From contig NW_025766981.1 in NCBI RefSeq assembly GCF_003918875.1, positions 620,001 through 684,000 on the forward strand: 64,000 nt of DNA, read 5' to 3'. Numbering within the stretch: the first letter of the stretch is position 1; each line of letters opens with the position of its first letter. Positions 1 through 50,963 of this stretch are shown piece after piece. A program made the translations under genes and the position numbers. The DNA is from Haliotis rubra (taxonomy: Eukaryota). The notes beneath the pieces are model-generated. The model was not told where the DNA came from. It searched no databases and saw only the letters and a list, made by a program, of their open reading frames with translations.

Positions 1-1829
1 GGGGCATTTGCATGGGAAACCTTGAGGCTCAGTATGTATCCATGGTGCCGTCAGGTGTTGGAATTTACAAGAGTTCAAGTTATGTCTCTGCTGTTGCCTA
101 CAGGGAAGATATCCATGCTATCAGAGGTGACATTCCATACGAGTCAACAATACGTTCAACTAATTGCTGTCCACTGGTTCAATCAAAGAGGAGGTGCAAA
201 CACTGTGACCTGTACAGAAATACTCTGCGGAAAAAGGATTCACGTCAAAAGGCCCACACTAGCTGTGTCAACATTTTTCTCTGAAGAAATCACCCCACAG
301 CACTATGAACTGAATTCATCTTGTTAAAAAAAATAATATGCTAAAAACTGAGAAGAGATCAATTCAAGCAGAACTTGACCGACTTATAAGACGTGTGCTT
401 GATGTCATCAAAACAAAAGGACATGTGTTAAGCGGCAGTGAAAACAAAGAACTTCTAGAAATTGTGGAACAATACACAAGTGATGCCGAGAGAAGTTATC
501 CAGACGAAAATTCTACTCAAAGGCTCTTCTGGGACCAACAGCTAAAATATGCTAAACTCAAAAACAAATCAACAATGAGGTGGCACCCTATGATGGTAAA
601 GTGGTGTTTGCATTTACGTAGCAAAAGTCAGAAAGCTTACAATGTGGCCAGAGATTCTGGATTTATTGCTCTTCCAAGTACCCGTACCTTATTTGACTAT
701 TCACATGTCTTGCCGAGTACATGTGGCTTTCATGAAAGATTTACTGAACATCTGATAGAACAGGCTGAAAAATGTGGAATGTACAAGGAAGAAGGGAAAT
801 CCTCTGTTGGGATCACCCAAGATGAAATTAAAGTATCAGAAGGACTGGTTTATGACAACAAAAGCGGCGAGTTAGTGGGATATGTAGAGCTGGACAAAAC
901 TGGGAATGACATCAGTAATATGGACAATCTGCTTAGTGGCAGTGATCCCAAACTTGCAAAATCCAATCTGGTTGTTATGGTGAGAGGCATCACTACATCT
1001 TTGCAGTATCCATTTTCTGTCTGGCTACTGATGGAATAATTTCAGCGACTTTATACCCTCCCATATGGGAAACTGTGAGAATACTAACAATTGAGTGTGG
1101 GTTAAAGCCATTGTTTATTACATGTGATGGGGCAACACCTAACAGGAAATTGTTCAAACTACATCGTAATGAAAAGTTGCAGAATACGTTTTGGACTTTA
1201 AACCCATATTCGCTTCCCACCAGGAAACTGTACTTCATATCTGATGTCCCACACTTACTAAAAACGACAGGAAACTGTTTTTCAAATTCAAATTCGTCAC
1301 ATGAATCGTTTTATTCGACTGTCTTAACACTAGACATTTAGAGGAGGCAAAACGCAAGAGGAACCCAGACCTAGAGTCATATAGGACACCAGATGACTCG
1401 AGATTTCATTATCTGACTGATGAATTTCTACAATATTTCAATGACTGGGAAATGGCAGTAATGAATAGGGCAGGACCATATACTCTACGGCAGAGAAAAA
1501 ATATGAAGCTGAGTCAACAGACATTGAATGGTCTCCATATCAGTGTGAACTCCATTGTAGAATGCACTAAGTTTCTTTTGCAAGAAGGAGCAAGTTTTGT
1601 TATGATTCACAGATTTAATCAGGATCCCCTTGAGGAACATTTCGCTCATTATAGACATAAAGATTGATCGAACGGCAACCCAACAGTTTTTGATGTCCGC
1701 AACACTCTTTCTCAACTCAGAGTAATTGGATCTGAAGCACTTGCTCCTATTCGGGAAAATATTACCAAAAGAAGACAACAGGGACCACTTGCTGTGGACA
1801 ATACCCCACTAGCAAAATGGCTGAGATAA
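1..1829 (+). pseudogene. Degenerate P-element/THAP9-type DDE transposase (frameshifts, stops, internal deletion)
   Basis: Motifs spread over ORFs 338-1039, 1075-1341 and 1452-1667: MRWHPMMVKWCLHL..SQKAY..LPSTRTL, QDEIKV..GLVYD, TCDGATPNR, FISDVPHLLK, FDCLNTR, RFNQDPLEEHF. The frame ends ...DNTPLAKWLR* at 1829. Part of the GTP-binding insertion is missing near 1300. Confidence 0.85.
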
Positions 1830-1859
1830 TCAAGTGACATCCTATTTCATGATTATGAC

Positions 1860-4520
1860 TGAAAACTTTGAAACGCTCAACTTCAAGGCGAGACAATCTG
1901 TTTTAAGTGGGACAGAGACATAATTCTACTATTCCCATACATATCTCCAGAGAATTCACCAATCTATGAAGGCTGTGACGATGATGGTATCTCCACACTG
2001 GAGGATTACTTTTACAGAGTGAAATCAGGCTATCCAGGGCCCCTATTTTATCGAAAGGATCCTAGCCCTAGGATATCCTAACTTTGATCCTAGTGTCTAG
2101 GATAGGTGTCCTGCCTAATTCTCAAAGTATCCTAGCGCTAGGATGCACATATTCTTTCGATCTACAAAAGAGATTTGTTCAATTCTTACCTAATCTAGGC
2201 CTTTTTAATTACAACATTGCTCTTTCCAGTCACATTGCCGAGAAATGTCAATGTCAAGGCCAACTTGATAGGGGAAGTATCTCCTGTTTTTTCCTAGGTG
2301 AATTTTTCAGTTTGTGAGATGATGCATAATTAGAGTTCAAGTGGTGATTTTCATAAAAAAACAAATACACTGGAAATACTTTTTGCACATATCTTTAATA
2401 TCCTTATTGGTATTTTTTGGCAGACTTTCAAACTCTGAAGTAAAAATGTAATCGCCTTGTCAAAAAATGAATTTTCAAAAACTTCAAAAGTACTATATAA
2501 TGTGATGGAAATATCGAATAATTTCCTTTAGATCTATTAAGTCCATCAAAAGCTGAATTTCCTTATAATTATGGGTTTTTTTATGTAATGAATCATGGAT
2601 AATATTTAGGGGAATCCCCAACTTAATGAGGGTATTTCTATCTAACCTACTGAAGAGCTCGCTATCCTATCTAGGATAGGTAGCACAAGTTAGGACAGGG
2701 AGAGGATCGTTTCGAGAATGGGTCTTATCCTAACGATGTCCTAACTTCTGTCTTAACTACTTAGGATCTGTCGTAGCTGGGACACTTTCGAGCATAGGGG
2801 CCCAGAGGAACATGTCTTCCTAGTTGGTGATCTGAATGTCAGAATGAATGACTTTCTTATACATTCCTGATGACATTGTTGAATATGTGTATGATGCAGA
2901 TGTACTACCCCATTGATGTGTTAGACACTCCAAGGAAGATGAGAGATAATAATTAACAGCATAATAACTATGGTATTAAATTTGCTGAACTGTGGTGCAA
3001 GTATGATTGATGACATGTTGGCATCTTCATCACTCTTTCCTTATAATAGATACTTTGGTACTGGTACACTAGATTTTTCATGTTACTTTCTATTATACCG
3101 TTCACTGGATATCTCTTGTAACCATGTAGATAGCCATATGTCTGGTAACTGTGGTAACAGCTGTAATGACCCTAAAGAACATGGACTAAGTTTGTATGGT
3201 TAAAAGATTATGAAAATACCTTGTACAGACAGATGTATTCTGGCATTGATGGCTCTGTATCTTTATTTGTAAAGTTGTCACATGATGCTGCAAGTCATAC
3301 TATGGGTGTATATCCACCAAGGTTTACAGATGATTGCAACCAAAATTAGAGGTGTTAGAGCTCATAGAGATCATTATCAAAGTCTGGATATATATTGTTT
3401 TGAGGAATAGTTTTAGGTATGTATTTAAAGCTAAATGGGAGTGGTATTTCAGTAAGAAGAAGGTGGTTGAAGCCAGCAAGGATTCAATATTTGCCCTGTA
3501 TTTTAAGTGAGATCGTAAAAATGATCCAAAGAATTACAGAATCATTTCACTTATAGATTCCACTTGTGAGATATTAATGTCTGTTATGAATAGCCACCTT
3601 CAAGTATGGTGTGAGGTGCATAATATTAGTGGATCAAAAGCTGGTTATAAGGCTAATTACTCTACAAGTGATCACATATTTTCCTTGCAGCCCTAACTTC
3701 AGAAATACATTAGCAAAATGGATGGAATACTTTATTGCCTGTTTATAGATTTTAGATAATTTCAATTGTGTAAATTTATTTAAGATATTTGATTGTATGA
3801 TCAGACCTATACTATGCTATGGATGATAAAAATTGATGCACTTCTTACTGGAATACCATGGAATCGGTCCACATCAAAGTTTGTACAAATGTATTTAATG
3901 TTGGACAATCTACTTGTAGCAATATGGTTTTATGGAATATGGAAGAGTACCTTTGCAATTTGCATTTATGTTTAAGGCTATTCGAGCCTTTCTTGTGTTT
4001 AATGTAGATTACTTTATATGCCTGATAATGGCTTACCAAAACAATGTTATCTTATCTTTATATAATGTAGGTCACGGTTCATGGACAATAAAGATAAAAC
4101 ATATTCTATTTCAATATGGATTTGGCTTTGTTTGCATTAGTCAGGAACTATGGGATCGAAAAGCTTTAGTTAATGATTTTTAATCAAACATTGTATGATA
4201 ATTTATTTCAGTCACGGTATTCATCTATACAGGCAACCCGTAAAGATTTTATTCTATTTCAATTCTATTTTGAATGTTGTAAGTTTACGTTAGAATTTGA
4301 AACTGGTATATATGAAAATGTTATTCTTGAGGAGGGGTAGTGCAAATCATGTAAATACAAGGGTATGTTTCTAGTGAAAGATGAATGGCATGTATTTGAT
4401 ATATGTGAAACATATTCTGTGTACATTATGAAATATTTTAGCATTTATCACACCATTAATAACTTTGCTGCAGTGATAAACAGTGATGTAATATGGCTAT
4501 TTTTGTACCATGTAAATAAA
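1860..4520 (+). mobile_element. Degenerate APE/RT LINE (RTE-X/CR1-group-like) inserted between the two P-element genes
   Basis: Endonuclease remnant FPYISPENSPIY..DGISTLEDY..|EHVFLVGDLNVR, interrupted by a MITE. RT remnant NDPKNYRIISL..YSTSDHIFSL..LYCLFIDF at about 3480-3755. Related to the LINE at 21456. Confidence 0.75.
2038..2802. mobile_element. Non-autonomous PIF/Harbinger-like MITE
   Basis: TIRs GGCCCCTATTTTATCGAAAG / CTTTCGAGCATAGGGGCC with a CAG 3-bp TSD. It splits a LINE endonuclease reading frame. A second copy lies at 47463-48686 in the opposite orientation. Confidence 0.85.
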
Positions 4521-4842
4521 ACAAGAAAAACGTAAGTGGACATTGTGTACATAATTGTGATGAAGTTTGTATTTTTTGCTGGAGGTCTTTTGCTGAATTA
4601 AACCATCTGTCTGTTTGCCTGTCTGTTTGTCACATAGTGATGATCAGAAACAGTGAACTGAGATACTTTCCATTCAGTGTTAAACATGTATTGACTTTGC
4701 ACGGTTAAATAGGAACAAATGGATTTACATCTCCACAAAAAATATGTATCTGACATAATGTTTTTGTAATAAATAAAGGGACACAAATCACCTAATAATA
4801 AAAAATCCCAGATAAATGAAAATGTCATATTTATCATGTTAA

Positions 4843-6508
4843 TCATTGTAAGGTCTCAATCGTTTTCTCAGAGACTGGGATTTCTTTCCTTTCAAAACTG
4901 ATTTGGCATTTTCCGTCTGGGTTTGGCACGTGTTTTGCAACGGCCCTTTCACGGAGTCTTAGGAATAGATCCACAATGTTCTCTAAGATTGCTGTTTTTA
5001 ATTTATCCTCAGAATCAGTTAGCTTGTCCCAGTAGTATGAAACCGTGATGTCTTGCATGATTGTCTCTTTCAGTGCTGTCTTTTGAATCAGTGTTGCGAT
5101 CATATAAATTAGATGCCTGTCTGCATATTGTCTCAATTTTTCGGACCAGAAAGAAAAAGATATCACCTCAGTCTTTCAGTCCACCACGATTCAACCTTCA
5201 GAGTCCACTTTTTTAACTTGGTTACAAAATCAGGAGACATCTCAGTAGATGAGGCTCAAAGGTTTTTCAGAATTAATGCAGAGGCTGCATTTCCATTCTT
5301 TTTCGAAATTTTCTCCATGGCATAAATCAAATATCCTGATATGTAGAAGAGCACAGAATTGTCTTGGTCTGTAAATGATTCTGCAGACTTCTCTGTTTAC
5401 TTCTGCAGACTTTTAGTAAAATTGTTAACAGCGCATCTGAGGAGGTCATCCAGCAGACCCTGACTAAAGAGGTGAACATGCATTTCTGTCTGTTTTGAAA
5501 CTTTCATGATCACAGATCTTAAATTGGCACAAAATTTAAAGTTTGTCCTCATTGCATGAAATTTACTAAACATTAATTCCTTGTCTGACGGGAAAGAGCT
5601 TGTCTTGCCTAAAACTGCCAATGTATCCAGTAATGGTGGTTTAATTAATGTTTCGAGATGTTGCATTGTGACAGGTGAAGAAATCACTGCTTTGCTGATC
5701 TCAATCATGATACCTCAGGATTTTGATGTGATCGAATTGTGGTTTGGGTTGTTGCACACTTCGGAGACCGCAGACTCAAGCAGTTGTGCAAATGACTTGT
5801 CAGTCAAGGTTGCTATGCTGCTTGATGTGTTTGTGACACCCTTGTTGTAGACAGGTGTAGCAGCAATATCACCAACTTTCTGTGTGTCTGACACCTTGTG
5901 CTGACTGACTGGAGTAAAATTAATTATATTAATATTGCTATTCTCCAGTTGCTGATTAAAACTGTATGTACAGATAACAGTAGGTAACGTGTAATTATTA
6001 TTAAAAAAAACAAAACATTTTTTTACAGATTAACATTCAATGCAGCAGAGATGGTTCGGTGCCTTATTATTATTTTTTTTGTTAAGCATTACCTATAAAC
6101 ACCTTTAATTAACCATGATCTGTGCTCAAAAAAAATTTTATTCAGTGAATATGCTGTGGCCTTAATTTGGATCAATATGACTGCATTTAGTCTGACCATC
6201 ACCTATCTGGAAATATTCACCATATTAGTACTCTCACCTATTACACCGGGTCGTTTGAGTTTGTTGACGACAGGAACACTGAACCCTGACACGGACAAAT
6301 ACTGTTTGGGGCACAGTGGACACTGGTAGCATGTCTTCTTTACGGAAGATGTGTCTGTGTTTTTTGTCTTGGTCTTAGATCGTTCGGTAGATTTATCTTC
6401 GTCATCTGACCATGAATCCGAGCTGAAGTCTAATTCGTACTCTGTCCATTCACCCAACATTGCCGATAAATCGACATCGGATTCGTCCCAATACAAGTAA
6501 TCTGACAT
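4843..6508 (-). pseudogene. Two-exon partner gene of the P-like element: degenerate C2H2 finger plus a domain resembling the P/THAP9 transposase C-terminus
   Basis: Exon 1 is 6508-6238 (MSDYLYWD..CPLCPKQY; the two His positions read Pro and Leu, each one base from a His codon). A GT-AG intron 6237-5909 joins in frame to ORF 5708-5397. The sequence continues through stops and frameshifts to LFYISGY (5331-5345), NRGGL (5177-5191) and ILENIVDLFLRLR. Confidence 0.65.
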
Positions 6509-6835
6509 TGTATGTGTTGGTAGATATATAACGATCGCGCTTATATTACATAGATGCGTGAATGAGCAATGCAACTATAGAACGTGTGACATGCACACAC
6601 ACATGACGTTTTGCGTCGAGAAAACTTCTGACAGCTGCGTTATCCGGATGTTTTGGTAAGTAAGGAAAGCATTGCGCAAGCGCAAGATGGTCAAAAGTTA
6701 ACTCATCGCGAGTCGCGGCTGGGGAACGTTATCACTCGTTATCAATGAACACGGTCAGCTTATGCGGCGCACATCGCCTAAGGCTTCCAATCCTGTGAAT
6801 ATACGTCCTTGGTGAAAGCTAATGAAAACAGTATT

Positions 6836-7014
6836 AGGTTTGTGTCGTGCCCGTTCGCCATTGACGACCTTGACCTTAACCTGCCCCGCACTAAAATGAG
6901 CAAGGGAGATCATTGGCTATAAATAAAATATGCCCCATCAGATCGCTGACTCTTTTCAGTGCGGGGCAGGTTAAGACCAAGGTGGTCAAGGGCGAACGGG
7001 CACGACACAATCCT
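6836..7014. repeat. Short palindromic MITE-like element (about 65-bp inverted arms)
   Basis: AGGTTTGTGTCGTGCCCGTTCGCC..CTGCCCCGCACT versus AGTGCGGGGCAG..GGCGAACGGGCACGACACAATCCT. Confidence 0.7.
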
Positions 7015-7289: not shown

Positions 7290-7486
7290 TGGGCGGTGGG
7301 GTTAAAACGTTCGCTCGTCAAGCCGAAGACCCGTGTACGATTCCCTACATGAGTACAATGTATGAAGCCCATTTCTGGTGTCCCCCGCCTTGATATTGCT
7401 GGAACATTGCTAAAAGTGGCGTAAAACTAAATTCACTCACTCAATCAATCAATCTCTCTCTCCCTCCCTCCCTCACTCACTCACTC
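7290..7486 (+). mobile_element. tRNA-derived SINE family A with (CACT)n tail
   Basis: Matches the copies at 52007 and 54626: GGGCGGTGGGG..CGATTCCC.ACATGGGTACAATGTGTGAAGCCCATTTCTGG..ATATTGCTAAAAGYGGCGTAAAACTAAA(CTCA)n. Confidence 0.85.
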
Positions 7487-7607: not shown

Positions 7608-9120
7608 TACTAAGCAGCAAAAGAAACGTCAGTTTGGAATTTTCCTTCGCAGAAACGGATAACTGTATACTCATTTAATGTTTTGACTGTATATTTTTGA
7701 CAACATATCCAACTTTACCTGAGCAAAGACATTCCTTCCCAAACTCAAAATGGTCTCAAAAACGCAACCTGATCTCGGAGACGGTACGGTGTTCTCCATG
7801 TTTTTCATGCAACTCATGCTGCACGTGCAGTTCACAAGGACCAGCCCTATAAAATGCACCCCCAAACCTGGTTGAAACATTCACATTACAACGTCAGCAG
7901 GATGCCGCAACTCACGACAGCTTAGAGGAACCAGGCGCTAGGAAGACTTAAAGCTGTCCACACTGCACAAGCCGTTGCCAATCACTTCCAGGTCAACGTT
8001 CGGACCATCTTCAGGCTGCAGCAATTGTTCCGGGCCACCAACATCCCAAATGGCATCCCCGTACTGGCAGACCAAGGGTGACCACAAGATGACAAGACCG
8101 CCATGTTGTGCGACAGCATGTACAGAATCTCTTCATGCCGGCATCCGAAACAGCACGCCAGACAGTAGGAACACACGGAAGACCAATCAGTACTGATACA
8201 GTACGCCGACGTCTTAACAGCGGGAACCCCCATTGCCGTAGACCTTACCGTGGACCTATCCTCACCCCTCGTCATCGGCGTGAACGTCTACAGTTTGCTC
8301 TACAACACCAAAACTGGCGATACAGGCAATGGAGAACTGTTCTGTTCACAGATGAGAGTCGGTACTGCGTATCAACTGCAGATGGCAGAACAAGAATATG
8401 GCGACGACGTGGCCAGCGTTACTCAGACCAATGTGTTATGGAAAGAGACTCATGGGGAGGTGCAAGCATCATGGTATGGGGTGGAATAGACCTGAACCAG
8501 AGAGTGGGTTCTGTGGTGTTCCAGAACCTTGGTCCAGGGAGAGGAGGCGGCATCACAGCGGTGCGCTACATCGACCAAGCTCTCAGACCCCACGTCATAC
8601 CACATTTCGCACGTCACCGGAACAACATTTTCCAGCATGATAACGCCAGGGCCCATACTGCCAGAGCTACACGGGACTTCCTACAGCAGAACGGTGTCAA
8701 CATTATGCAGTGGCCAGCCCTTAGTCCTGATTTAAACCCAATTGAACATCTTTGGGATGAAATTCAGAGGAGACTGAATAATGTCATACCAAGGCCGAAC
8801 ACAGCTGATTTATTGCGCCAGAGTGTGGTTCCAGGTGCCAATGGCCTTCATCAATCGATTGGTGCACTCCATGCATAGACGCTGTGCTGCAGTTATTGCC
8901 GCTCGTGGTGGTCACACTAGATACTGAAGTCAAGAGTCTGAACGGACTGCAAACATTCACGTTATGTCTTTGAACTGTGCTGAGTTATTCATTGATGTGT
9001 CAGGATATTGTACACAAAAAATGTTTTTGATCCGCTTATTATGTCCATTTCTGTAATGATTTGATTACAGTGCCTATCTTATTTTGAATTCGTACTGACG
9101 GGTTTTTCTGCTGCTGAGTA
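7608..9120 (+). mobile_element. Full-length Tc1 (DD34E) transposon with an inactivated transposase (7902-8927)
   Basis: TIRs TACTAAGCAGCAAAAGAAACGTCAG / CTGACGGGTTTTTCTGCTGCTGAGTA flanked by TA. Motifs GRPRVTT, FTDESR, QHDNARAH and SPDLNPIEHLW with D-34-E spacing, ending GGHTRY*. There are N-terminal stops and a frameshift. Confidence 0.92.
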
Positions 9121-45000: not shown

Positions 45001-48000
45001 GTGTCGAATTTCATTCATCTATGTTCAAGCTTAATCGACTTATGTATACTTAAATACGTTTAATACATTTCCTTATTTTTAGCCTAATCGTTTCTTTTCT
45101 TTAGATAAAGAAGTGAGTGAGTATGGTTTTACGCCTCTTTTGGCAATATTCCCGCAATATCACGGCAGGGCGACACCAGAAATGGGCTTCACACTTTGTA
45201 CCCATGTGGGGAATCGAACCCGGGTCCTCGGCGTGACGAGCGAACGCTTTTAAAACCGGCACCGTTCACTGACCATGTAGATAAAGAAAGATGTGCATTT
45301 TTAAAAATCTATTAATTACCTTTTGTATTCAAACAATCGTCCAAATATGTAACAAAAGTGTTGATAACATGATTTTACACAATTGCACAAGTAAAAAATC
45401 GACTTTACCTGAAAATGTTGATTTTGATGAGCTTTCTTACAAGGATTAAAAAGGCATAGCCACAACGCAACAGAAATCACCTTTCAGTTGAAACTGTGCA
45501 GCAAAGAGCATGCACTGTTTGACACTGAACATCGCAATTGAAAGAATGCACGCTGAGATTATCAGTCTTCTGTTGCCAAACGTCTGAATGTTATTCTGAG
45601 CACGATATCACGGCTTGCAGCTCATTAATACCAAATAGGCATAACAAATGACCGTCCCCGTACAGGCAGACCTCGAGTCACCACTGTAGCCCAAGATCGG
45701 AACATCCGGGTACTACATTTGCGTGATCATACTGCCAACTGTACAGAACAGGTTGAGAGAGATTGGACTGAGAGCCAGGAGCCCCGACGTCGGGACCGTG
45801 CTACGTCGTAACCATCGCGCATAACGTCTCCGTTATCTAAAATTATCCACTTGGTTGTATAAACGTTTCCTTCTTTTAAACTGGTGTCTAGATTCATGTA
45901 CTAAAGTCTATTTGTGGACGAGTTATACATGTTTGAAAATACATTTTCGCAACAGATATCTGGGTTATGCGTTTCATTTTGTGAATAGTATATTTTAGTA
46001 CCTTTGTAATGTTTACATTTCACTGATAGTATGTCACATATTGTATACGAAAGACTAATGCTGCTACGTTTGTCGCATACATATTTTGTTCAGCGAAATC
46101 TGTAGTTGTTTTGATTAGTTTCTCATTGCTTCGATTATTTCAAGTTTCTTTCAACAACCAGAAAATCCGAGTATTTTCTCGCTGCTTCATATATTTTCTC
46201 GGTGTTTGAATTATTTCTTCAAATTTTGAGTATTTTCTCGTTAGTTCATTTATATTCTCCAGATTTTGAGTATTTTCCTATGCTACTTGAAATGACAAGA
46301 AAATATTCAAAACTGGAAGAAACCAGAAACAGATAAACGTAATGATAAACAAATTCGTCTGGAATTCAAATACATCTCAGAGAGTATATTTTAATAGTCC
46401 AAAACAATCAGTGTTTAGTTTTAGGTCATGACGTACTTAGCGGACTCATTATGTCAGCAATTTATATTCAATTTGATTAATTAAGGAGGCATGCAAACTT
46501 TCAGTGTTATATGCCGGCTTGATATGTGTTGGTTGAAGCAGCTTATTTAAGAAATCAATGCAAATTATGTAAGATCAAACATTGCACTCTTAACTCACAG
46601 TTACCATAACCCGTGAAGATCCTAACCCGTTAGAATTAATCTTAAGTAACTCATGCTTGTCGTAAGAGGCGACTAACGGGATCGGGTGACCAGGCGCGCT
46701 GGCTTGGTTGACCATGTCATCGTATCCCAATTGCGAAGTCGATGCTCATGATGCTGATCACTGTATTGTCTGGTCCAGACTCGATTATTCACAGACCGCC
46801 ACCATAAAGCTGGAATATTGCCGAGTGCAGCGTTAAACAACAAACCTACCAACCAACGTTGCACCAATCTGCGATTGCAAAAATATCACAAGTGAAAATA
46901 GAGAATTGCATAATAATAAGTCATCTTCTATAGCGCACAGACTCCAAACACCAAGTGATTGCTCGCGGCGCTTAATCAGATTCTTATTACCCCGGATAAC
47001 CCAAGCTGCCTGTTAGGCGCTAGAAGGTTATAGTCACATGACTTTATCCCACCGGGTACCCATTTTCAGCTAGGTGAACAGAGGCAATTTCAACAAACTC
47101 ACTTGCCTAAGACCACATGCATCACATGTGCTTCGTTGTGGGGCAGGACTGAAGCCCTAGAAACTCTCAGGAGTCAGGCTGCCAAACACGGACACCCATC
47201 CAAGGATTGTCCGAGCTCGACGTTGCTTAACTTCAACTGATTTGTGACCTGAGCTCTGTGCACAGGACCACGCGCCACCACCATAGGACATCATTTTGGT
47301 CACTGAGTGTCTGAATTCGAGATGTTTTCTCCCATTGCTACCATGCAACCTTCTGAAAGCATTATTAAGGCCTTGGATGGTGTGGTCCTGGTCAAGAAAC
47401 CTTTGAGAAAGTGCAACAGGTAGCTGTTCATAGTGCGTGACAAGATCCCCTAAGAAGGTCTGGGTGCCTATTCTCGAAAGTGTCCCATCTAAGACAGATC
47501 CTAACTAGTTGGGACAGGAGTTAGGACATCCTACCGTTAGGATAAGACCCATTCTTGAAACGACGCTATCCCCGTCCTAACTTGAGCTACCGATCCTAGC
47601 TAGGATAACGAGCTCTTCAGTAGAAGAGATAGGAAAACATTCATTACGTTGGGGGATTCCCCTAAATATCACCCATGATTCATTCCATAAATAACACATA
47701 TACAAATGTATAAAGGCAAATACAATCTCGTTTGCAAGATAAATGGTAAGACTAGAAATCGAAGTAGAAGCTTGAATGTGGTGAAAGTCAGCTTTTGGTG
47801 GACTTAATAGATCTAGAAGAAATTATAATTAATTATGGTTATAATTAAAATACACCTCTTGTATCCAGAAAAATAGAGGTGAATTAGTACCTGAATGGAT
47901 TTTAAATATTTAATGAAATTGTTTAATATCTATTTGTTCAAATTACCATACTTCCAGAAAACAAAGTATTGTTATAATTATGCTGCTATATTCGATATTT

Positions 48001-50963
48001 TCATCACATTATAGTAGATTTGAAGTTTTTAAAATTCATTTATTTCACAAGGATATAACATTTTTACTTCAGAGTTTGAAAGTCTGCCAAAAAAGCAATA
48101 AGATATGTGCGAAAATATTTTCATTTTATTTCCTTTTTTTGAGAAAATCATGACTTGAACTCTCATTATGCGTCATCTCACAAACTGAAAATTCACCTAG
48201 GAAATAAACAGGAATTACTCCCCCTATCAAGCTGGCCTTGACATTGACATTTCACGTCAATGTGACAGAAAAGAGTAATGTTTTGATTAAAAAGGCAGAG
48301 AATAGGTAAGAATTGAACAAATCTCTTTTGTAGATCTAAAAAGTATGTGCATTGCAACAAGTGTGACTATTCATTACCGATAAATTGATAATATAAACAC
48401 AAAATACTATTCTTAACTAAAACTGTTTGCTGTTGTAATTTCAAATGTAATTTAGGCTAGTTATTTTTTTTGACAACGTCAAGATTGGTGAACAAACAAG
48501 AACCACACCATGTTGATTTCCACTAACATAGACTTAGGACAAGTCAGAACCTATCCTAGTAATTGTCCTAAGTTAAGATATCCTAGCGCTAGGATACTTT
48601 TCGAGAATAAGGTAGGACACCTATCCTAGACCCTAGGATCAAAGTTAAGATATCCTAGGGCTAGGATCCTTTCGAGAATAGGGGCCCAGAAACGTAGTTA
48701 CAAAGATGTAGCTGCTGAAGTATGGCATCACTCAAGCAAGAGAGTCGGGGAAAGGTTGATTATTGCAAATGTCTTCACACAGATTTAGTCACGAAGATGT
48801 ATACATAGATCTTACATTGAATCATGTCTAGTTGCACATAATTGGCTGTTTGACCATTAAAGTACTGTCGGAAATAGAAACAAAAACTGTTTTTAGGCTG
48901 TTACCCTGTATCCCTAAAATTTACACAACTACCAAAATCAAATGTTGAAATAACCCACATTGGTTCAGTGGGGTGTGTCATAGAATATCCAGAAGTGCAT
49001 GTTTACTCGTAAAATAGGGCAAAACTAAAAAAATACGAATAGCTGCTGAAAACAATAGATGGCAATTAGGTCGCTCAGCCAGGTTTGACGACGGACCGTC
49101 GACTCACCTGGCATGAAATGCACGTGCTACCTACAGGCACAAGGGGTCATCTCAAAGATATTTTATGCTTTTGTCATGTTTATTGAATATGTCTCATCTA
49201 TTTGATTATCATCTTACGTGTCTTTCATAACGTGTATGTTGAGATATGTAAAAGAATATGATACCCATAGGAAAGCTTAAATCAACTATCGTATTAAATG
49301 TCTCAAAATATATAGGTGACAAGACCACCCCAAGATCGACAGGACTGGATATTATTTGTTAATTGTTAAGACATGCCGTTTACTTCCTCCAGTTTAATTC
49401 CCCTAAAGGATTATTTTATCGTAGCTGATATCTCTATGCCCCATGCCAGTACGACCCCAACCACCGTCTGCGACACCCGTCCTGGTTTTGCTTTTGAGAC
49501 AAGCCCTCCTACCTGTTTCTTTTTAAAGTGATAGTGGGGCTCCATGGTAGCTTCATCCTAAATAGTTTCTGTATTAAAGTCGATATGTTTTACGTCAGCT
49601 ATCGTTTATAATGAAGCTAAGTCTAGTTTCAAAATAGGCATTTAAATAGTGTCCTTTGAAATACAATAGCATCGCACACTAATTTGCATAAAGCCATGGT
49701 CTGTTCTAAATAAGTTGCTTTGGACTTAGAAAAAACCGCATTGCTCATTTGAGCACTTATCTCTCCTCAGTAAAGTCCTTTTAACGTTTCCTATCTCCCC
49801 GCCACTGAGACTGTAGTTAGACCGAACTTAGTTTCACAGATATTTCACACTTTCACATTTTAACTTCATAAATGGTAGATATATATGTGATATATATATT
49901 TTTTCTATTTCCGACAGTACTTTAGTGAGCACTATCAGATCATCCATATACCAGAAACCCAATATCAGAATTGGGTGAATGCACAATGTCATGTGATAAG
50001 TTATGAAATGTAACATTTGTTACATTCTTATTCTTACTACAGATTCTAGTACTTTTTGGGGTTGAGTCACATCCGCAGAGTCATGCACCTTGGTGTGCAT
50101 GTTTCCAGCACACCAAGTCAGCCATCTAACCCACTCAGCCAACATGGTTTCCAAGTCGGACAACTGGTAGTCTAGGTCACGTGCCTGACTCTGAAAGTGT
50201 GGGTTCGAATCCCGGATCCGTCTCAACCCAAAGCGAAGTAGAATCTACACTTTACTGAGAAAGTGTAATCCCAAATATAGCAAATGCCCCTTGTTTTGTG
50301 TTTGCCAGTCAGGTTCCAGACAAGGTTCCAATTCTGATTCCTATGTAAATGCCTACGGTCAGCTGTTGGTTTCAGGATCACTGTTTGCCGGAGTTGGGCT
50401 GATCAACATCCTCTCAGAAGGTTTAGGCCTACCAGCTTTCAACCAGATGTATGATGCAACTGTAAAGATATTCCGTGGTTTCGCCTTCCTCGTCTGTGCT
50501 GCTTGTCATTTGTTGGCGATAGTTATCATAGTGTGAGTATATGAATGATCATGGGTACATTAAATTTTCAGGAAAATGTAAAGGATATTTTATTTGCCTT
50601 TTTTTATAAAACCTCTTGTGTCTTCAATGCCAGCACCCGCATTACATAGTGATGACGTCTCACGTTCAAACTTTCCAGTCATGTCCAACATCTGATGTCA
50701 TCTGTGTGACATATCTGTTCTACGTAGTTTCAGTATTGTACAAGGTTTAGTCTTCACTGAATACGACGTTTTACAGCCGAAACATGTTTGTATGTTAGTG
50801 TCGACATACATGTGTTTCGTACTATAAGGACTTTTACTCATCCAGTAAAGTAAACACAACTCTTATATATTTTTTGTCTTGCAGGGTGTTTCTGTGTTTG
50901 TCGCGCCGCACCACCGACATTAATACCTCCATCAATGTTGCCATCAATGACTCCGATCGGTAG
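42070..50963 (+). CDS. SLC46: SLC46-family transporter, copy 5, 475 aa (recent duplicate of copy 4)
   Basis: Exons 42070-43177, 43419-43502, 50376-50532 and 50885-50963; 1428 nt in frame. Intron 2 is expanded to 6.9 kb by TEs. Confidence 0.88.
43515..45101 (+). mobile_element. Degenerate Tc1 transposon in intron 2 of copy 5
   Basis: Left TIR TACACTCTTAAAAAAGAAACG. Transposase remnants at 44192-44915 (IRNRLRE, FSDESRF, GVMVWG, SPDLNQIEH, GGVKRY*). Absent from the copy 4 intron. Confidence 0.8.
45113..45255 (-). mobile_element. SINE family A
   Basis: Consensus match with flanking direct repeat TAGATAAAGAA. Confidence 0.8.
45345..45991 (+). mobile_element. Tc1 deletion derivative
   Basis: N-terminal transposase remnant (DRPRTGRPRVTT..QDR.IR) and right TIR TGCGTTTC.TTTTGTGAATAGTA-TA. 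Same family as 53680 and 63860. Confidence 0.7.
46609..46856 (+). mobile_element. SINE family B
   Basis: ACCCGTGAAGATCC..CATGCTTGTCGTAAGAGGCGACTAACGGGATCGGG..GGAATATTGC..GTTAAACAACAAACC. Confidence 0.85.
46911..47282 (-). mobile_element. SINE with chimeric 5S rRNA/tRNA-like head, Deu/Nin-like core and L2-like tail
   Basis: Minus strand reads GAAGTTAAGCAACGTCGAGCTCGG..CTTGGATGGGTG (5S internal control region), then CACCTAGCTGAAAATGGGTACC, GCGCCTAACAGGCAGCT, and GCGCTATAGAAG..(TTA)n. Absent from the copy 4 intron. Confidence 0.7.
47463..48686. mobile_element. PIF/Harbinger-like MITE, longer copy of the 2038-2802 element in reverse orientation
   Basis: TIRs GGTGCCTATTCTCGAAAG / CTTTCGAGAATAGGGGCC with CTG/CAG flanks. 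The empty site AAGAAGAACTGGAACGTAGTT is at about 37861 in copy 4. Confidence 0.85.
48861..49921. mobile_element. Kolobok-like non-autonomous DNA transposon
   Basis: TIR AGTACTGTCGGAAATAGAAA / TTTCTATTTCCGACAGTACT with TTAA and TTAG flanks. Absent from the copy 4 intron. Confidence 0.75.

What the first reader, a model, noticed from the sequence alone, without database searches (positions are those of the whole stretch)
1..6811. Bipartite P-like transposon: transposase lacking its C-terminal domain faces a separate gene encoding such a domain
Seen: the + strand transposase stops about 70 aa after the catalytic QDPLEEHF motif. A convergent spliced gene (6508 to about 4843) encodes a decayed C2H2 finger followed by LFYISGY...NRGGL...IVDLFLRLR. 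Recalled knowledge: Drosophila P and THAP9-type transposases carry a YIAGY...RGGL..P...YxxIR domain at their own C-terminus. Inference: this lineage has split the enzyme, or keeps a stand-alone C-terminal-domain partner fused to a DNA-binding finger, inside one element ending at CAAGGACGTATA (6811). That would be a two-component P transposition system.
Basis: partly seen in the sequence, partly recalled or inferred. Interest (0 to 1): 0.7.

Follow-up and report, generated by a model that had tools for sequence, protein, structure and literature searches.

The report
Two-gene P transposon, dead copy
This stretch is a decayed copy of an abalone jumping gene related to the fruit-fly P element, whose cutting enzyme lacks its usual tail domain while a second, oppositely oriented gene encodes that tail joined to a zinc finger; the same two-gene design occurs in animals from Hydra to acorn worms.

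Summary
The scan found this family twice before on other DNA of this genome (s1-339668, s1-347343).

**This copy.** Window 1-6811 is the right-hand three quarters of a P-superfamily transposon, and it is dead. The transposase has three frame changes, a 254-bp deletion and an internal TGA. The partner has four in-frame stops and three frameshifts, and both finger histidines are lost.

**The family.** Intact or near-intact relatives show the design is real. Elements bounded by inverted repeats and 7-bp target duplications carry both convergent genes in Haliotis rubra, H. cracherodii, an unidentified ENA organism, a crinoid, an acorn worm and Hydra. Mytilus, Patella, Batillaria and H. rufescens also have the gene pair.

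**The transposase.** All 63 relatives that keep the NQDPLE motif end 49-83 residues after it.

**The partner.** Its C-terminal half matches the Drosophila P transposase C-terminal domain.
- Sequence: that domain is also the best PDB profile hit (E 0.0087).

That the two proteins assemble in trans is inferred, not shown. I found no paper describing this.

The parts
1..1829 (+). P-like transposase pseudogene, cut at its 5' end by the window edge. Its homologues carry an N-terminal Cys-rich domain, HTH, RNase H with a GTP-binding insertion, and a short basic tail, but no C-terminal domain.
   Evidence: Pfam gives PF21787 at 1.1e-8 and PF12017 at 0.0066 on 338-1039. It is 88-91% identical to H. 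rubra P0011 and 47-68% to H. cracherodii P0008. Frames shift at ~281-338 and ~1015-1040.
6..281 (+). Remnant of the transposase N-terminal Cys-rich motif (ICMGN ... C x9 C x2 C).
   Evidence: Aligns with the invariant C123, C174, C183 and C186 columns of 20 homologues.
1289..1292 (+). Junction of a 254-bp internal deletion that removes most of the GTP-binding insertion domain.
   Evidence: Window 1-1289 matches L015 9701-10986 and window 1292-2037 matches L015 11240-11984. P0011 residues 332-419 are missing.
1617..1643 (+). NQDPLEEHF motif of the RNase H C-terminal part, holding the catalytic Glu.
   Evidence: In the homologue it aligns to NQDIVEHFF of 6p5a_A, chain positions 526-534. Coordinates.
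1665..1667 (+). In-frame TGA, specific to this copy.
   Evidence: Intact relatives read GG(S/A)N here.
1668..1829 (+). Short transposase tail (NPT motif, basic end) and the family's natural stop.
   Evidence: The tail ends at the same place in P0011, P0008 and 63 of 63 relatives, 49-83 aa after the motif.
2037..2802 (.). Nested unrelated repeat in the spacer between the two genes.
   Evidence: Absent from paralogue L015, where 11984 and 11981 are contiguous. A second copy lies at window 47459-48687, inverted, 85-92% identical.
1830..4838 (.). Spacer between the two convergent stop codons.
   Evidence: 78-85% identical to the L015 spacer, in patches.
4839..5908 (-). Partner gene exon 2, decayed: a helical domain followed by the P-transposase-CTD-like domain and a basic tail.
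   Evidence: The partner HMM hits pieces 5400-5714, 5259-5396 and 4846-5175 at E 1e-17 to 1e-7. Stops and frameshifts were located.
5331..5348 (-). FYISGY motif, the start of the CTD-like domain.
   Evidence: The family profile aligns this motif to EYIAGY of the P transposase CTD chain 6p5a_B. Coordinates.
5177..5191 (-). NRGGL motif of the CTD-like domain. In this copy it sits in a shifted frame and is followed by a stop at 5168-5170.
   Evidence: The family motif aligns to HGGL(IKPS) of 6p5a_B. Coordinates.
5909..6237 (-). Partner intron, GT..AG, phase 1.
   Evidence: Donor G|GTGAG and acceptor CCAG|. NCBI model P0002 joins ...DVI|VSQHKV.
6238..6508 (-). Partner exon 1: acidic WD(E/D)SD-DL-LLGE motif and one C2H2 finger.
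   Evidence: 86% identical to P0002 residues 1-92. HMM E 1.8e-24.
6251..6331 (-). C2H2 finger with both His ligands lost (GFSVPVVNKLKR, against GFRGHVVNKHKR in P0002).
   Evidence: The Cys and His columns are invariant in intact homologues.
6781..6811 (-). Right terminal inverted repeat.
   Evidence: Read inward it is CAAGGACGTATATTCACAGGATTGGAAGCCT, against CAAAGACGTATATACACAGGATTGGAAGCCT in the 31-bp perfect TIRs of L015. It also resembles the L001 TIR.
6812..6818 (.). Flanking GTGAAAG, the expected right copy of a 7-bp target duplication.
   Evidence: The family makes 7-bp TSDs. The left copy lies outside the window, so this is untested here.

Best explanation
Window 1-6811 is the right-hand ~6.8 kb of a roughly 9-kb P-superfamily DNA transposon of the blacklip abalone, and this copy is dead.

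The family encodes two convergent genes between its terminal inverted repeats:
1. A transposase with an N-terminal Cys-rich domain, an HTH and an RNase H domain split by a GTP-binding insertion. It ends about 70 residues after the catalytic-Glu motif and so lacks the alpha-helical C-terminal domain (CTD) of the Drosophila P and THAP9 enzymes.
2. A 416-480-aa partner protein with an acidic N-terminal motif, one C2H2 finger, a helical domain and then a homologue of that CTD.

Shown here:
- the anatomy;
- CTD homology of the partner, by profile and by fold;
- absence of the CTD from the whole transposase clade;
- both genes lying inside TIR- and TSD-bounded elements in several phyla;
- near-identical paired copies whose few coding differences are all synonymous.

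Inferred:
- the partner supplies the CTD in trans. In the solved P transpososome the CTD is joined to the RNase H domain only by a disordered linker, sits between the RNase H domain of one subunit and the GTP-binding domain of the other, and contacts transposon and target DNA;
- the finger adds DNA binding;
- transposition needs both proteins, so expression of the partner could gate activity, much as splicing-in of the last exon does for the Drosophila P element.
For: **Transposase identity**
- PF21787, PF21788 and PF21789 hit the intact 800-aa ORF of L001.
- Its best solved relative is 6p5a_A, E 4.3e-14, with NQDPLEEHF aligned to NQDIVEHFF.

**No CTD in the transposase**
- No PF12596 or PF22824 hit.
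- None of the 120 listed relatives (best of 133) carries either family in the precomputed table.
- 63 of 63 relatives with the motif end 49-83 aa after it. In Drosophila the enzyme continues to at least residue 734 (6p5a_B) after a motif at 526.
- The partner HMM scores below 6 bits on all 120.

**Partner carries the CTD**
- A profile of 11 partner sequences has the CTD chain 6p5a_B as its best PDB hit (E 0.0087), aligning YIaGY and GGLxkPs.
- An AlphaFold model (pLDDT 76) gives Foldseek probability 0.90 and TM 0.64 against 6p5a_B.
- PF12596 is the top, sub-threshold hit for the Hydra partner (E 0.0027) and also appears for Mytilus (E 0.19).
- Precomputed PF22824 THAP9_C marks the Patella and Mytilus partners and, weakly, the H. 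rufescens one.

**One element**
- L015, H. rubra: 9,064 bp, 31-bp TIRs, TSD GTCCATA.
- L001, H. cracherodii: TSD ATACCAA.
- L003/L004, ENA organism: 99.3% identical, 44-bp TIRs, TSD CTCTAAC in L003.
- L012/L013, Antedon: 99.5% identical, 39-bp TIRs, TSD GTTTTAG.
- L011, Ptychodera: 30-bp TIRs, TSD matching at 6 of 7 bases. L014, Hydra: TSD ATATTTT.

**Co-inheritance and constraint**
- Partner and transposase distances correlate (Mantel r 0.74, p 0.01).
- Between the two ENA copies the coding DNA has 3 differences in 3,945 bp, all synonymous. The left non-coding 1,053 bp has 5.
Against: - There are no functional data. No RNA run holds the stretch, so even expression is untested.
- The sequence-level CTD matches are individually weak: E 0.0087 against PDB, and PF12596 below its gathering score. 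The local Pfam copy gave no PF12596 or PF22824 hit for the five full-length partner proteins scanned.
- Helical domains can reach a middling Z by chance. Here, though, the match stands about 5 Z units above everything else and covers the whole domain.
- The partner alignment used for folding is shallow, at 11 rows.
- A CTD-less transposase might work alone, with the partner acting as a regulator.
- The window copy itself is non-functional, and its left end was not seen.
Confidence: 0.8

Rival explanations
1. The partner is an element-encoded regulator or targeting factor, not an obligatory subunit. It could be a CTD decoy or repressor, or a finger protein that tethers the transposase. On this view the CTD-less transposase is catalytically self-sufficient.
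For: [quoted passage not shown]
- The partner has extra parts the canonical CTD lacks: an acidic motif, a finger and a helical domain with no clear fold match.
- The partner evolves faster than the transposase (p-distance 0.40-0.84 against 0.32-0.66).
Against: - In Drosophila only the full-length protein with the CTD transposes, and the CTD contacts both transposon and target DNA (PMC7776569).
- The partner is retained intact next to an intact transposase in near-identical, presumably recently active, copies in two phyla. The pairing spans cnidarians to deuterostomes.
Confidence: 0.15
2. The resemblance of the partner to the P transposase CTD is a generic helical-bundle similarity. On this view the partner is an unrelated accessory DNA-binding protein, like the Myb-like protein of PIF/Harbinger elements.
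For: - Sequence matches are weak (E 0.0087; PF12596 below cut-off).
Against: - That domain is exactly the one missing from the neighbouring transposase.
Confidence: 0.04
3. Chance juxtaposition: two unrelated decayed repeats happen to lie tail to tail in this window.
For: - Both genes here are pseudogenes.
- The spacer carries a nested foreign repeat.
Against: - The same convergent pair occurs in every locus examined, in ten organisms.
- Similarity between copy pairs begins and ends at shared TIRs that enclose both genes.
Confidence: 0.01

Closest known systems
Drosophila P element transposase and vertebrate THAP9 (P superfamily)
   Same: - HTH, and an RNase H catalytic domain split by a GTP-binding insertion (PF21787, PF21788, PF21789).
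- The NQDxxE catalytic motif.
- TIRs that begin with CA.
- 7-bp TSDs, within the 7-8 bp I recall for the superfamily (my own knowledge, not checked here).
- The CTD fold is present in the system.
   Different: - The CTD is not part of the transposase. It is encoded by a second, convergent gene and fused to an acidic motif, a C2H2 finger and an extra helical domain.
- Mollusc and hemichordate transposases show no Pfam THAP domain. The modelled H. cracherodii N-terminus has an RWD/UBC-like fold and, like its homologues, a four-Cys motif.
- Hydra keeps THAP.
P element 66-kDa repressor (third intron retained)
   Same: A P-type protein with DNA-binding and catalytic-core regions but without the part encoded by the last exon, where the CTD lies (PMC7776569).
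   Different: There, the CTD is removed by regulated splicing of one gene. Here, the CTD-less form is the only product of the transposase gene, and the CTD comes from another gene.
PIF/Harbinger transposons (transposase plus Myb-like DNA-binding protein)
   Same: A TIR element that encodes a catalytic protein and a second protein with a DNA-binding module. This comparison rests on my own knowledge of the family.
   Different: The Harbinger partner is not a detached domain of the transposase, and the superfamily and fold are different.
ProtoRAG / RAG-like transposons (convergent RAG1L and RAG2L genes)
   Same: Two convergently oriented genes inside one TIR-bounded element in marine invertebrates (PMC7204232, abstract seen).
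   Different: It belongs to an unrelated transposase superfamily, and RAG2L is not homologous to a domain of RAG1.

Membership tests
P superfamily DNA transposon | [quoted passage not shown] | tested here: met
   The intact L001 ORF hits PF21787 at 1.3e-21, PF21788 at 7e-24 and PF21789 at 5.3e-7. The window copy keeps PF21787 (1.1e-8) but has lost most of the insertion domain to a 254-bp deletion.
P superfamily DNA transposon | Sequence homology to the solved P element transposase, including the catalytic Glu motif | tested here: met
   6p5a_A is hit at E 4.3e-14. DGASPN aligns to DLGTGN and NQDPLEEHF to NQDIVEHFF. The first catalytic Asp lies outside the aligned stretch and was not verified.
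P superfamily DNA transposon | Terminal inverted repeats with 7-8-bp target site duplications | tested here: met
   Five exact 7-bp TSDs and one matching at 6 of 7 bases, in six elements. For the window copy only the right TIR (6781-6811) is visible.
P superfamily DNA transposon | [quoted passage not shown] | tested here: not met
   No THAP hit at E up to 1 in the Haliotis, Mytilus or Ptychodera transposase N-termini. The Antedon protein has a zf-AD-like hit. The Hydra protein has THAP at 1.1e-10. The feature therefore varies within the clade.
P superfamily DNA transposon | C-terminal alpha-helical domain within the transposase polypeptide | tested here: not met
   Searches show it is absent from all relatives retrieved. 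This is the point of difference from canonical P elements.
P transposase C-terminal domain (Pfam PF12596 Tnp_P_element_C / PF22824 THAP9_C), tested on the partner protein | Profile match above the curated threshold | tested here: inconclusive
   - Local Pfam: PF12596 E 0.0027 (18.7 bits against a cut-off of 22.6) for Hydra and E 0.19 for Mytilus; nothing for the gastropod proteins.
- Precomputed tables from a newer Pfam list PF22824 for the Patella and Mytilus partners and, weakly, for the H. rufescens one.
- PDB profile search: the best hit is the CTD chain, E 0.0087.
P transposase C-terminal domain (Pfam PF12596 Tnp_P_element_C / PF22824 THAP9_C), tested on the partner protein | Same fold as residues 617-734 of the solved P transposase | tested here: met
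   [not shown]
C2H2 zinc finger (partner N-terminus) | C-x2-C-x12-H-x4-H ligands | tested here: met
   The ligand columns are invariant in intact homologues (C97, C100, H113 and H118 of P0003). Pfam zf-C2H2_4 hits are sub-threshold at 2.6e-4 to 3e-3. In the window copy both His are lost.

The most novel reading that the evidence does not exclude
The two-subunit form is the ancestral state of P-type transposases, present before cnidarians and bilaterians split. On this reading the single-chain Drosophila P and THAP9 enzymes arose by fusing the partner's CTD onto the catalytic gene. [quoted passage not shown]
Probability: 0.25. Interest if true: 0.85.

Novelty: new variant of a known kind. Interest (0 to 1): 0.7.

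Why it matters
P elements are a textbook transposon and a model for how one multi-domain enzyme cuts and pastes DNA. A widespread clade that keeps the DNA-contacting C-terminal domain on a separate protein would have several consequences.
- It would show that this domain works as an independent module.
- It would offer a natural two-component version of the enzyme for structural and mechanistic work.
- It would give an easy handle for controlling activity: supply or withhold the partner.
- It would bear on how THAP9 and P transposases were assembled in evolution.

Nearly identical intact copies in a crinoid and in an unidentified marine organism suggest the system may still be active and could be tested directly.

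Tried and rejected
- Pfam on the window's own decayed pieces found only the transposase N-terminal families and nothing for the partner. I therefore moved to intact homologues.
- A phmmer search of 1.8 billion representatives with one 104-aa partner piece gave only 4 hits. One was a spurious Knl1 MELT-repeat protein.
- Word-based searches with the full partner and with a 3-sequence profile added only 3 proteins. More partners were recovered by walking from transposase homologues to their neighbours.
- The local Pfam copy never reports PF22824, although the precomputed tables do. The version numbers differ, so I did not lean on either alone.
- The look-up of Ptychodera P0020 found nothing on record.
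- No RNA-seq run holds the stretch, so read laying was not used and expression and splicing remain untested.
There is therefore no rooted tree and no profile-profile comparison with PF12596.
In the Mantel test only regions lying in single ORFs were used.
- Chance juxtaposition and host-gene capture were considered and rejected, because the pair recurs inside TIRs in every locus examined.
Full report
**What is in the window**

Six-frame reading shows a + strand P-like transposase that is already under way at base 1. The window starts at about residue 221 of the 909-aa H. cracherodii homologue P0008.
- The Cys-rich N-terminal motif (ICMGN, then C-x9-C-x2-C) lies at 6-281.
- The HTH and the first half of the RNase H domain lie at 338-1039 (PF12017 and PF21787).
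- The second catalytic-Asp region, TCDGATPN, is at 1120-1143.
- NQDPLEEHF is at 1617-1643, and the natural stop follows AKWLR at 1827-1829.

The copy is broken in several places.
- The frame changes near 281-338 and near 1015-1040.
- A 254-bp deletion at 1289/1292 removes most of the GTP-binding insertion. It corresponds to P0011 residues 332-419 and to L015 10987-11239.
- A TGA sits at 1665-1667.

The partner gene lies on the - strand.
- Exon 1 is 6508-6238. It holds an acidic WDESDVDL..LGEWTEYE motif and one C2H2 finger.
- The GT..AG intron is 6237-5909.
- Exon 2 runs from 5908 to the original stop at 4839-4841.
- Exon 2 has in-frame stops at 5715-5717, 5397-5399, 5256-5258 and 5168-5170, and three frameshifts.
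- Both histidine ligands of the finger are replaced (compare P0002).

The spacer between the genes carries an unrelated 766-bp insertion at 2037-2802. That insertion is absent from a paralogue and is repeated at 47459-48687.

**The element's end**

CAAGGACGTATA ends at 6811. A paralogous copy in the same species, L015 (GCA_003918875.1), carries protein P0011, which NCBI names as Haliotis rubra. It is 92-94% identical to the window over the transposase and 85% over the partner, and the similarity stops at window 6813.
- L015 is complete: 9,064 bp.
- It has 31-bp perfect TIRs reading CAAAGACGTATATACACAGGATTGGAAGCCT.
- It has an exact 7-bp duplication, GTCCATA.

The window's 6781-6811 is the same TIR with two substitutions. 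GTGAAAG at 6812-6818 is the expected right half of a TSD. The left end of this copy lies upstream of the window and could not be seen.

**The two-gene layout recurs and is bounded by TIRs**

I started from one 104-aa partner piece and then moved on from intact proteins. This recovered partner proteins of 416-480 aa in H. cracherodii, H. rufescens, Patella caerulea, Batillaria attramentaria and an unidentified organism in ENA assembly ERZ25069853. In each locus a P-like transposase gene lies downstream on the opposite strand.

Working the other way, I took transposase homologues and inspected their surroundings. A partner profile finds a convergent partner ORF in all four species:

| Species | E-value |
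|---|---|
| Mytilus galloprovincialis | 3e-37 |
| Antedon mediterranea (crinoid) | 3e-19 |
| Ptychodera flava (acorn worm) | 2e-15 |
| Hydra vulgaris | 5e-12 |

Element boundaries were mapped in six cases:

| Locus | Organism | TIRs | TSD |
|---|---|---|---|
| L015 | H. rubra | 31 bp, perfect | GTCCATA |
| L001 | H. cracherodii | 74 nt, 74% complementary, starting CACGGAC | ATACCAA |
| L003/L004 | ENA organism | 44 bp; copies 99.3% identical | CTCTAAC (L003) |
| L012/L013 | Antedon | 39 bp; copies 99.5% identical | GTTTTAG |
| L011 | Ptychodera | 30 bp, perfect | 6 of 7 bases match |
| L014 | Hydra | long subterminal inverted repeats | ATATTTT |

In every case both genes lie inside the repeats.

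**The transposase really lacks the C-terminal domain**
- The intact 800-aa ORF of L001 has the three P-type Pfam families but no PF12596 or PF22824 at E up to 10.
- Its alignment to the solved P transposase ends at the NQD..E/NPT region.
- None of the 120 listed relatives (best of 133) carries a CTD family in the precomputed table.
- All 63 relatives that retain the motif end 49-83 residues after it (median 71), with a conserved basic tail.
- None of the 120 contains the YI.GY plus GGL motif pair.
- The partner HMM scores below 6 bits on all of them, even with HMMER's filters off.

**The partner carries that domain**
- A profile of 11 partner sequences from five phyla (A3) has as its best hit, among 177,635 PDB sequences, chain B of 6P5A/6PE2. 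That chain is the P transposase CTD, deposited separately. The hit has E 0.0087 and aligns LfYIaGY with EYIAGY, and nRGGLkkPs with HGGLIKPS.
- An AlphaFold model of P0003 residues 160-480 (mean pLDDT 76, all-helical) matches 6p5a_B with Foldseek probability 0.90 and target-normalised TM 0.64.
- Local Pfam gives PF12596 as the top, sub-threshold hit for the Hydra partner (E 0.0027) and a weaker one for Mytilus.
- Precomputed tables list PF22824 THAP9_C for three partners.
- The helical domain before the CTD (P0003 160-295) has no clear structural relative.

**Signs of function as a unit**
- Partner and transposase pairwise distances over eight loci correlate (Mantel r 0.74, permutation p 0.01). 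Shared host phylogeny contributes to this.
- Between the two ENA copies, the two ORFs (3,945 bp) differ at 3 sites, all synonymous. The left non-coding 1,053 bp has 5 differences.
- The Antedon partner ORFs differ at 1 synonymous site.

**How it most likely works**

In the solved P transpososome the CTD is tied to the RNase H domain only by a disordered linker. It sits between the RNase H domain of one subunit and the GTP-binding domain of the other, and it contacts the looped transposon strand and the target DNA. Only the CTD-containing 87-kDa protein transposes, while the 66-kDa form that lacks the C-terminal third is a repressor (PMC7776569).

A CTD delivered as a separate polypeptide is therefore structurally plausible, and I take this as the best reading. 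The C2H2 finger and the acidic motif would add DNA or protein contacts. This step is inferred and nothing here tests it. The main rival is that the partner is a regulator or tether and not a required subunit.

**Comparison and novelty**

The element belongs to the P superfamily by its catalytic core, TIRs and TSD. It departs from the family definition in two ways. It has no CTD in the transposase, and in molluscs and the hemichordate it has no recognisable THAP domain.

Four full-text searches found no description of a two-gene P element or of a stand-alone P-CTD protein. Repbase reports could not be searched. Two earlier notes of this scan reached the same reading on other loci of this genome. 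I re-derived it independently here.

I rate it a new variant of a known kind. The specific locus is an ordinary dead copy, and the interest lies in the family.

**Limits**
- No expression evidence.
- No canonical fused-CTD sequences were in hand, so there is no rooted tree and no profile-profile test.
- The folding alignment is shallow.

Noticed in passing
window 6836-7014: A hairpin with 86-nt arms (81% complementary, 7-nt loop) starts 25 bp beyond the transposon end. It looks like a foldback or MITE-like repeat.
   Followed up: no
window 7297-7447: A ~150-bp interspersed repeat. It is also present at 76-86% identity twice in H. cracherodii L001, once in H. rufescens L002 and twice in H. rubra L015. 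It is probably a Haliotis SINE or MITE.
   Followed up: partly
window 8108-8878: A 256-aa ORF that reads like a Tc1/mariner-type transposase (…HDNARAHTA…LNPIEHLWDE…). This is judged from the translation only and no family scan was run.
   Followed up: no
window 2037-2806 and 47459-48687: Two inverted copies of an unrelated repeat, 85-92% identical. The first is a nested insertion in the transposon's spacer and is absent from paralogue L015.
   Followed up: partly
[not shown]
   Followed up: partly
L012 1002-8984: The Antedon copy L012 carries an ~8-kb insertion with its own inverted ends (TAGTGGAGTCTGTTAGGGA…) inside the left part of the P-like element. Sister copy L013 lacks it.
   Followed up: no
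L003 12692-13152 / L004 12693-13386: A ~234-bp tandem unit in the spacer between the two genes is present in two copies in L003 and three in L004.
   Followed up: no
L004 ends (8948 and 17472): This copy has no matching target duplication: ATTTTAC on the left against AATAGGT on the right. Its 99.3%-identical sister L003 has a clean 7-bp TSD. A flank rearrangement or recombination between copies could explain it.
   Followed up: no
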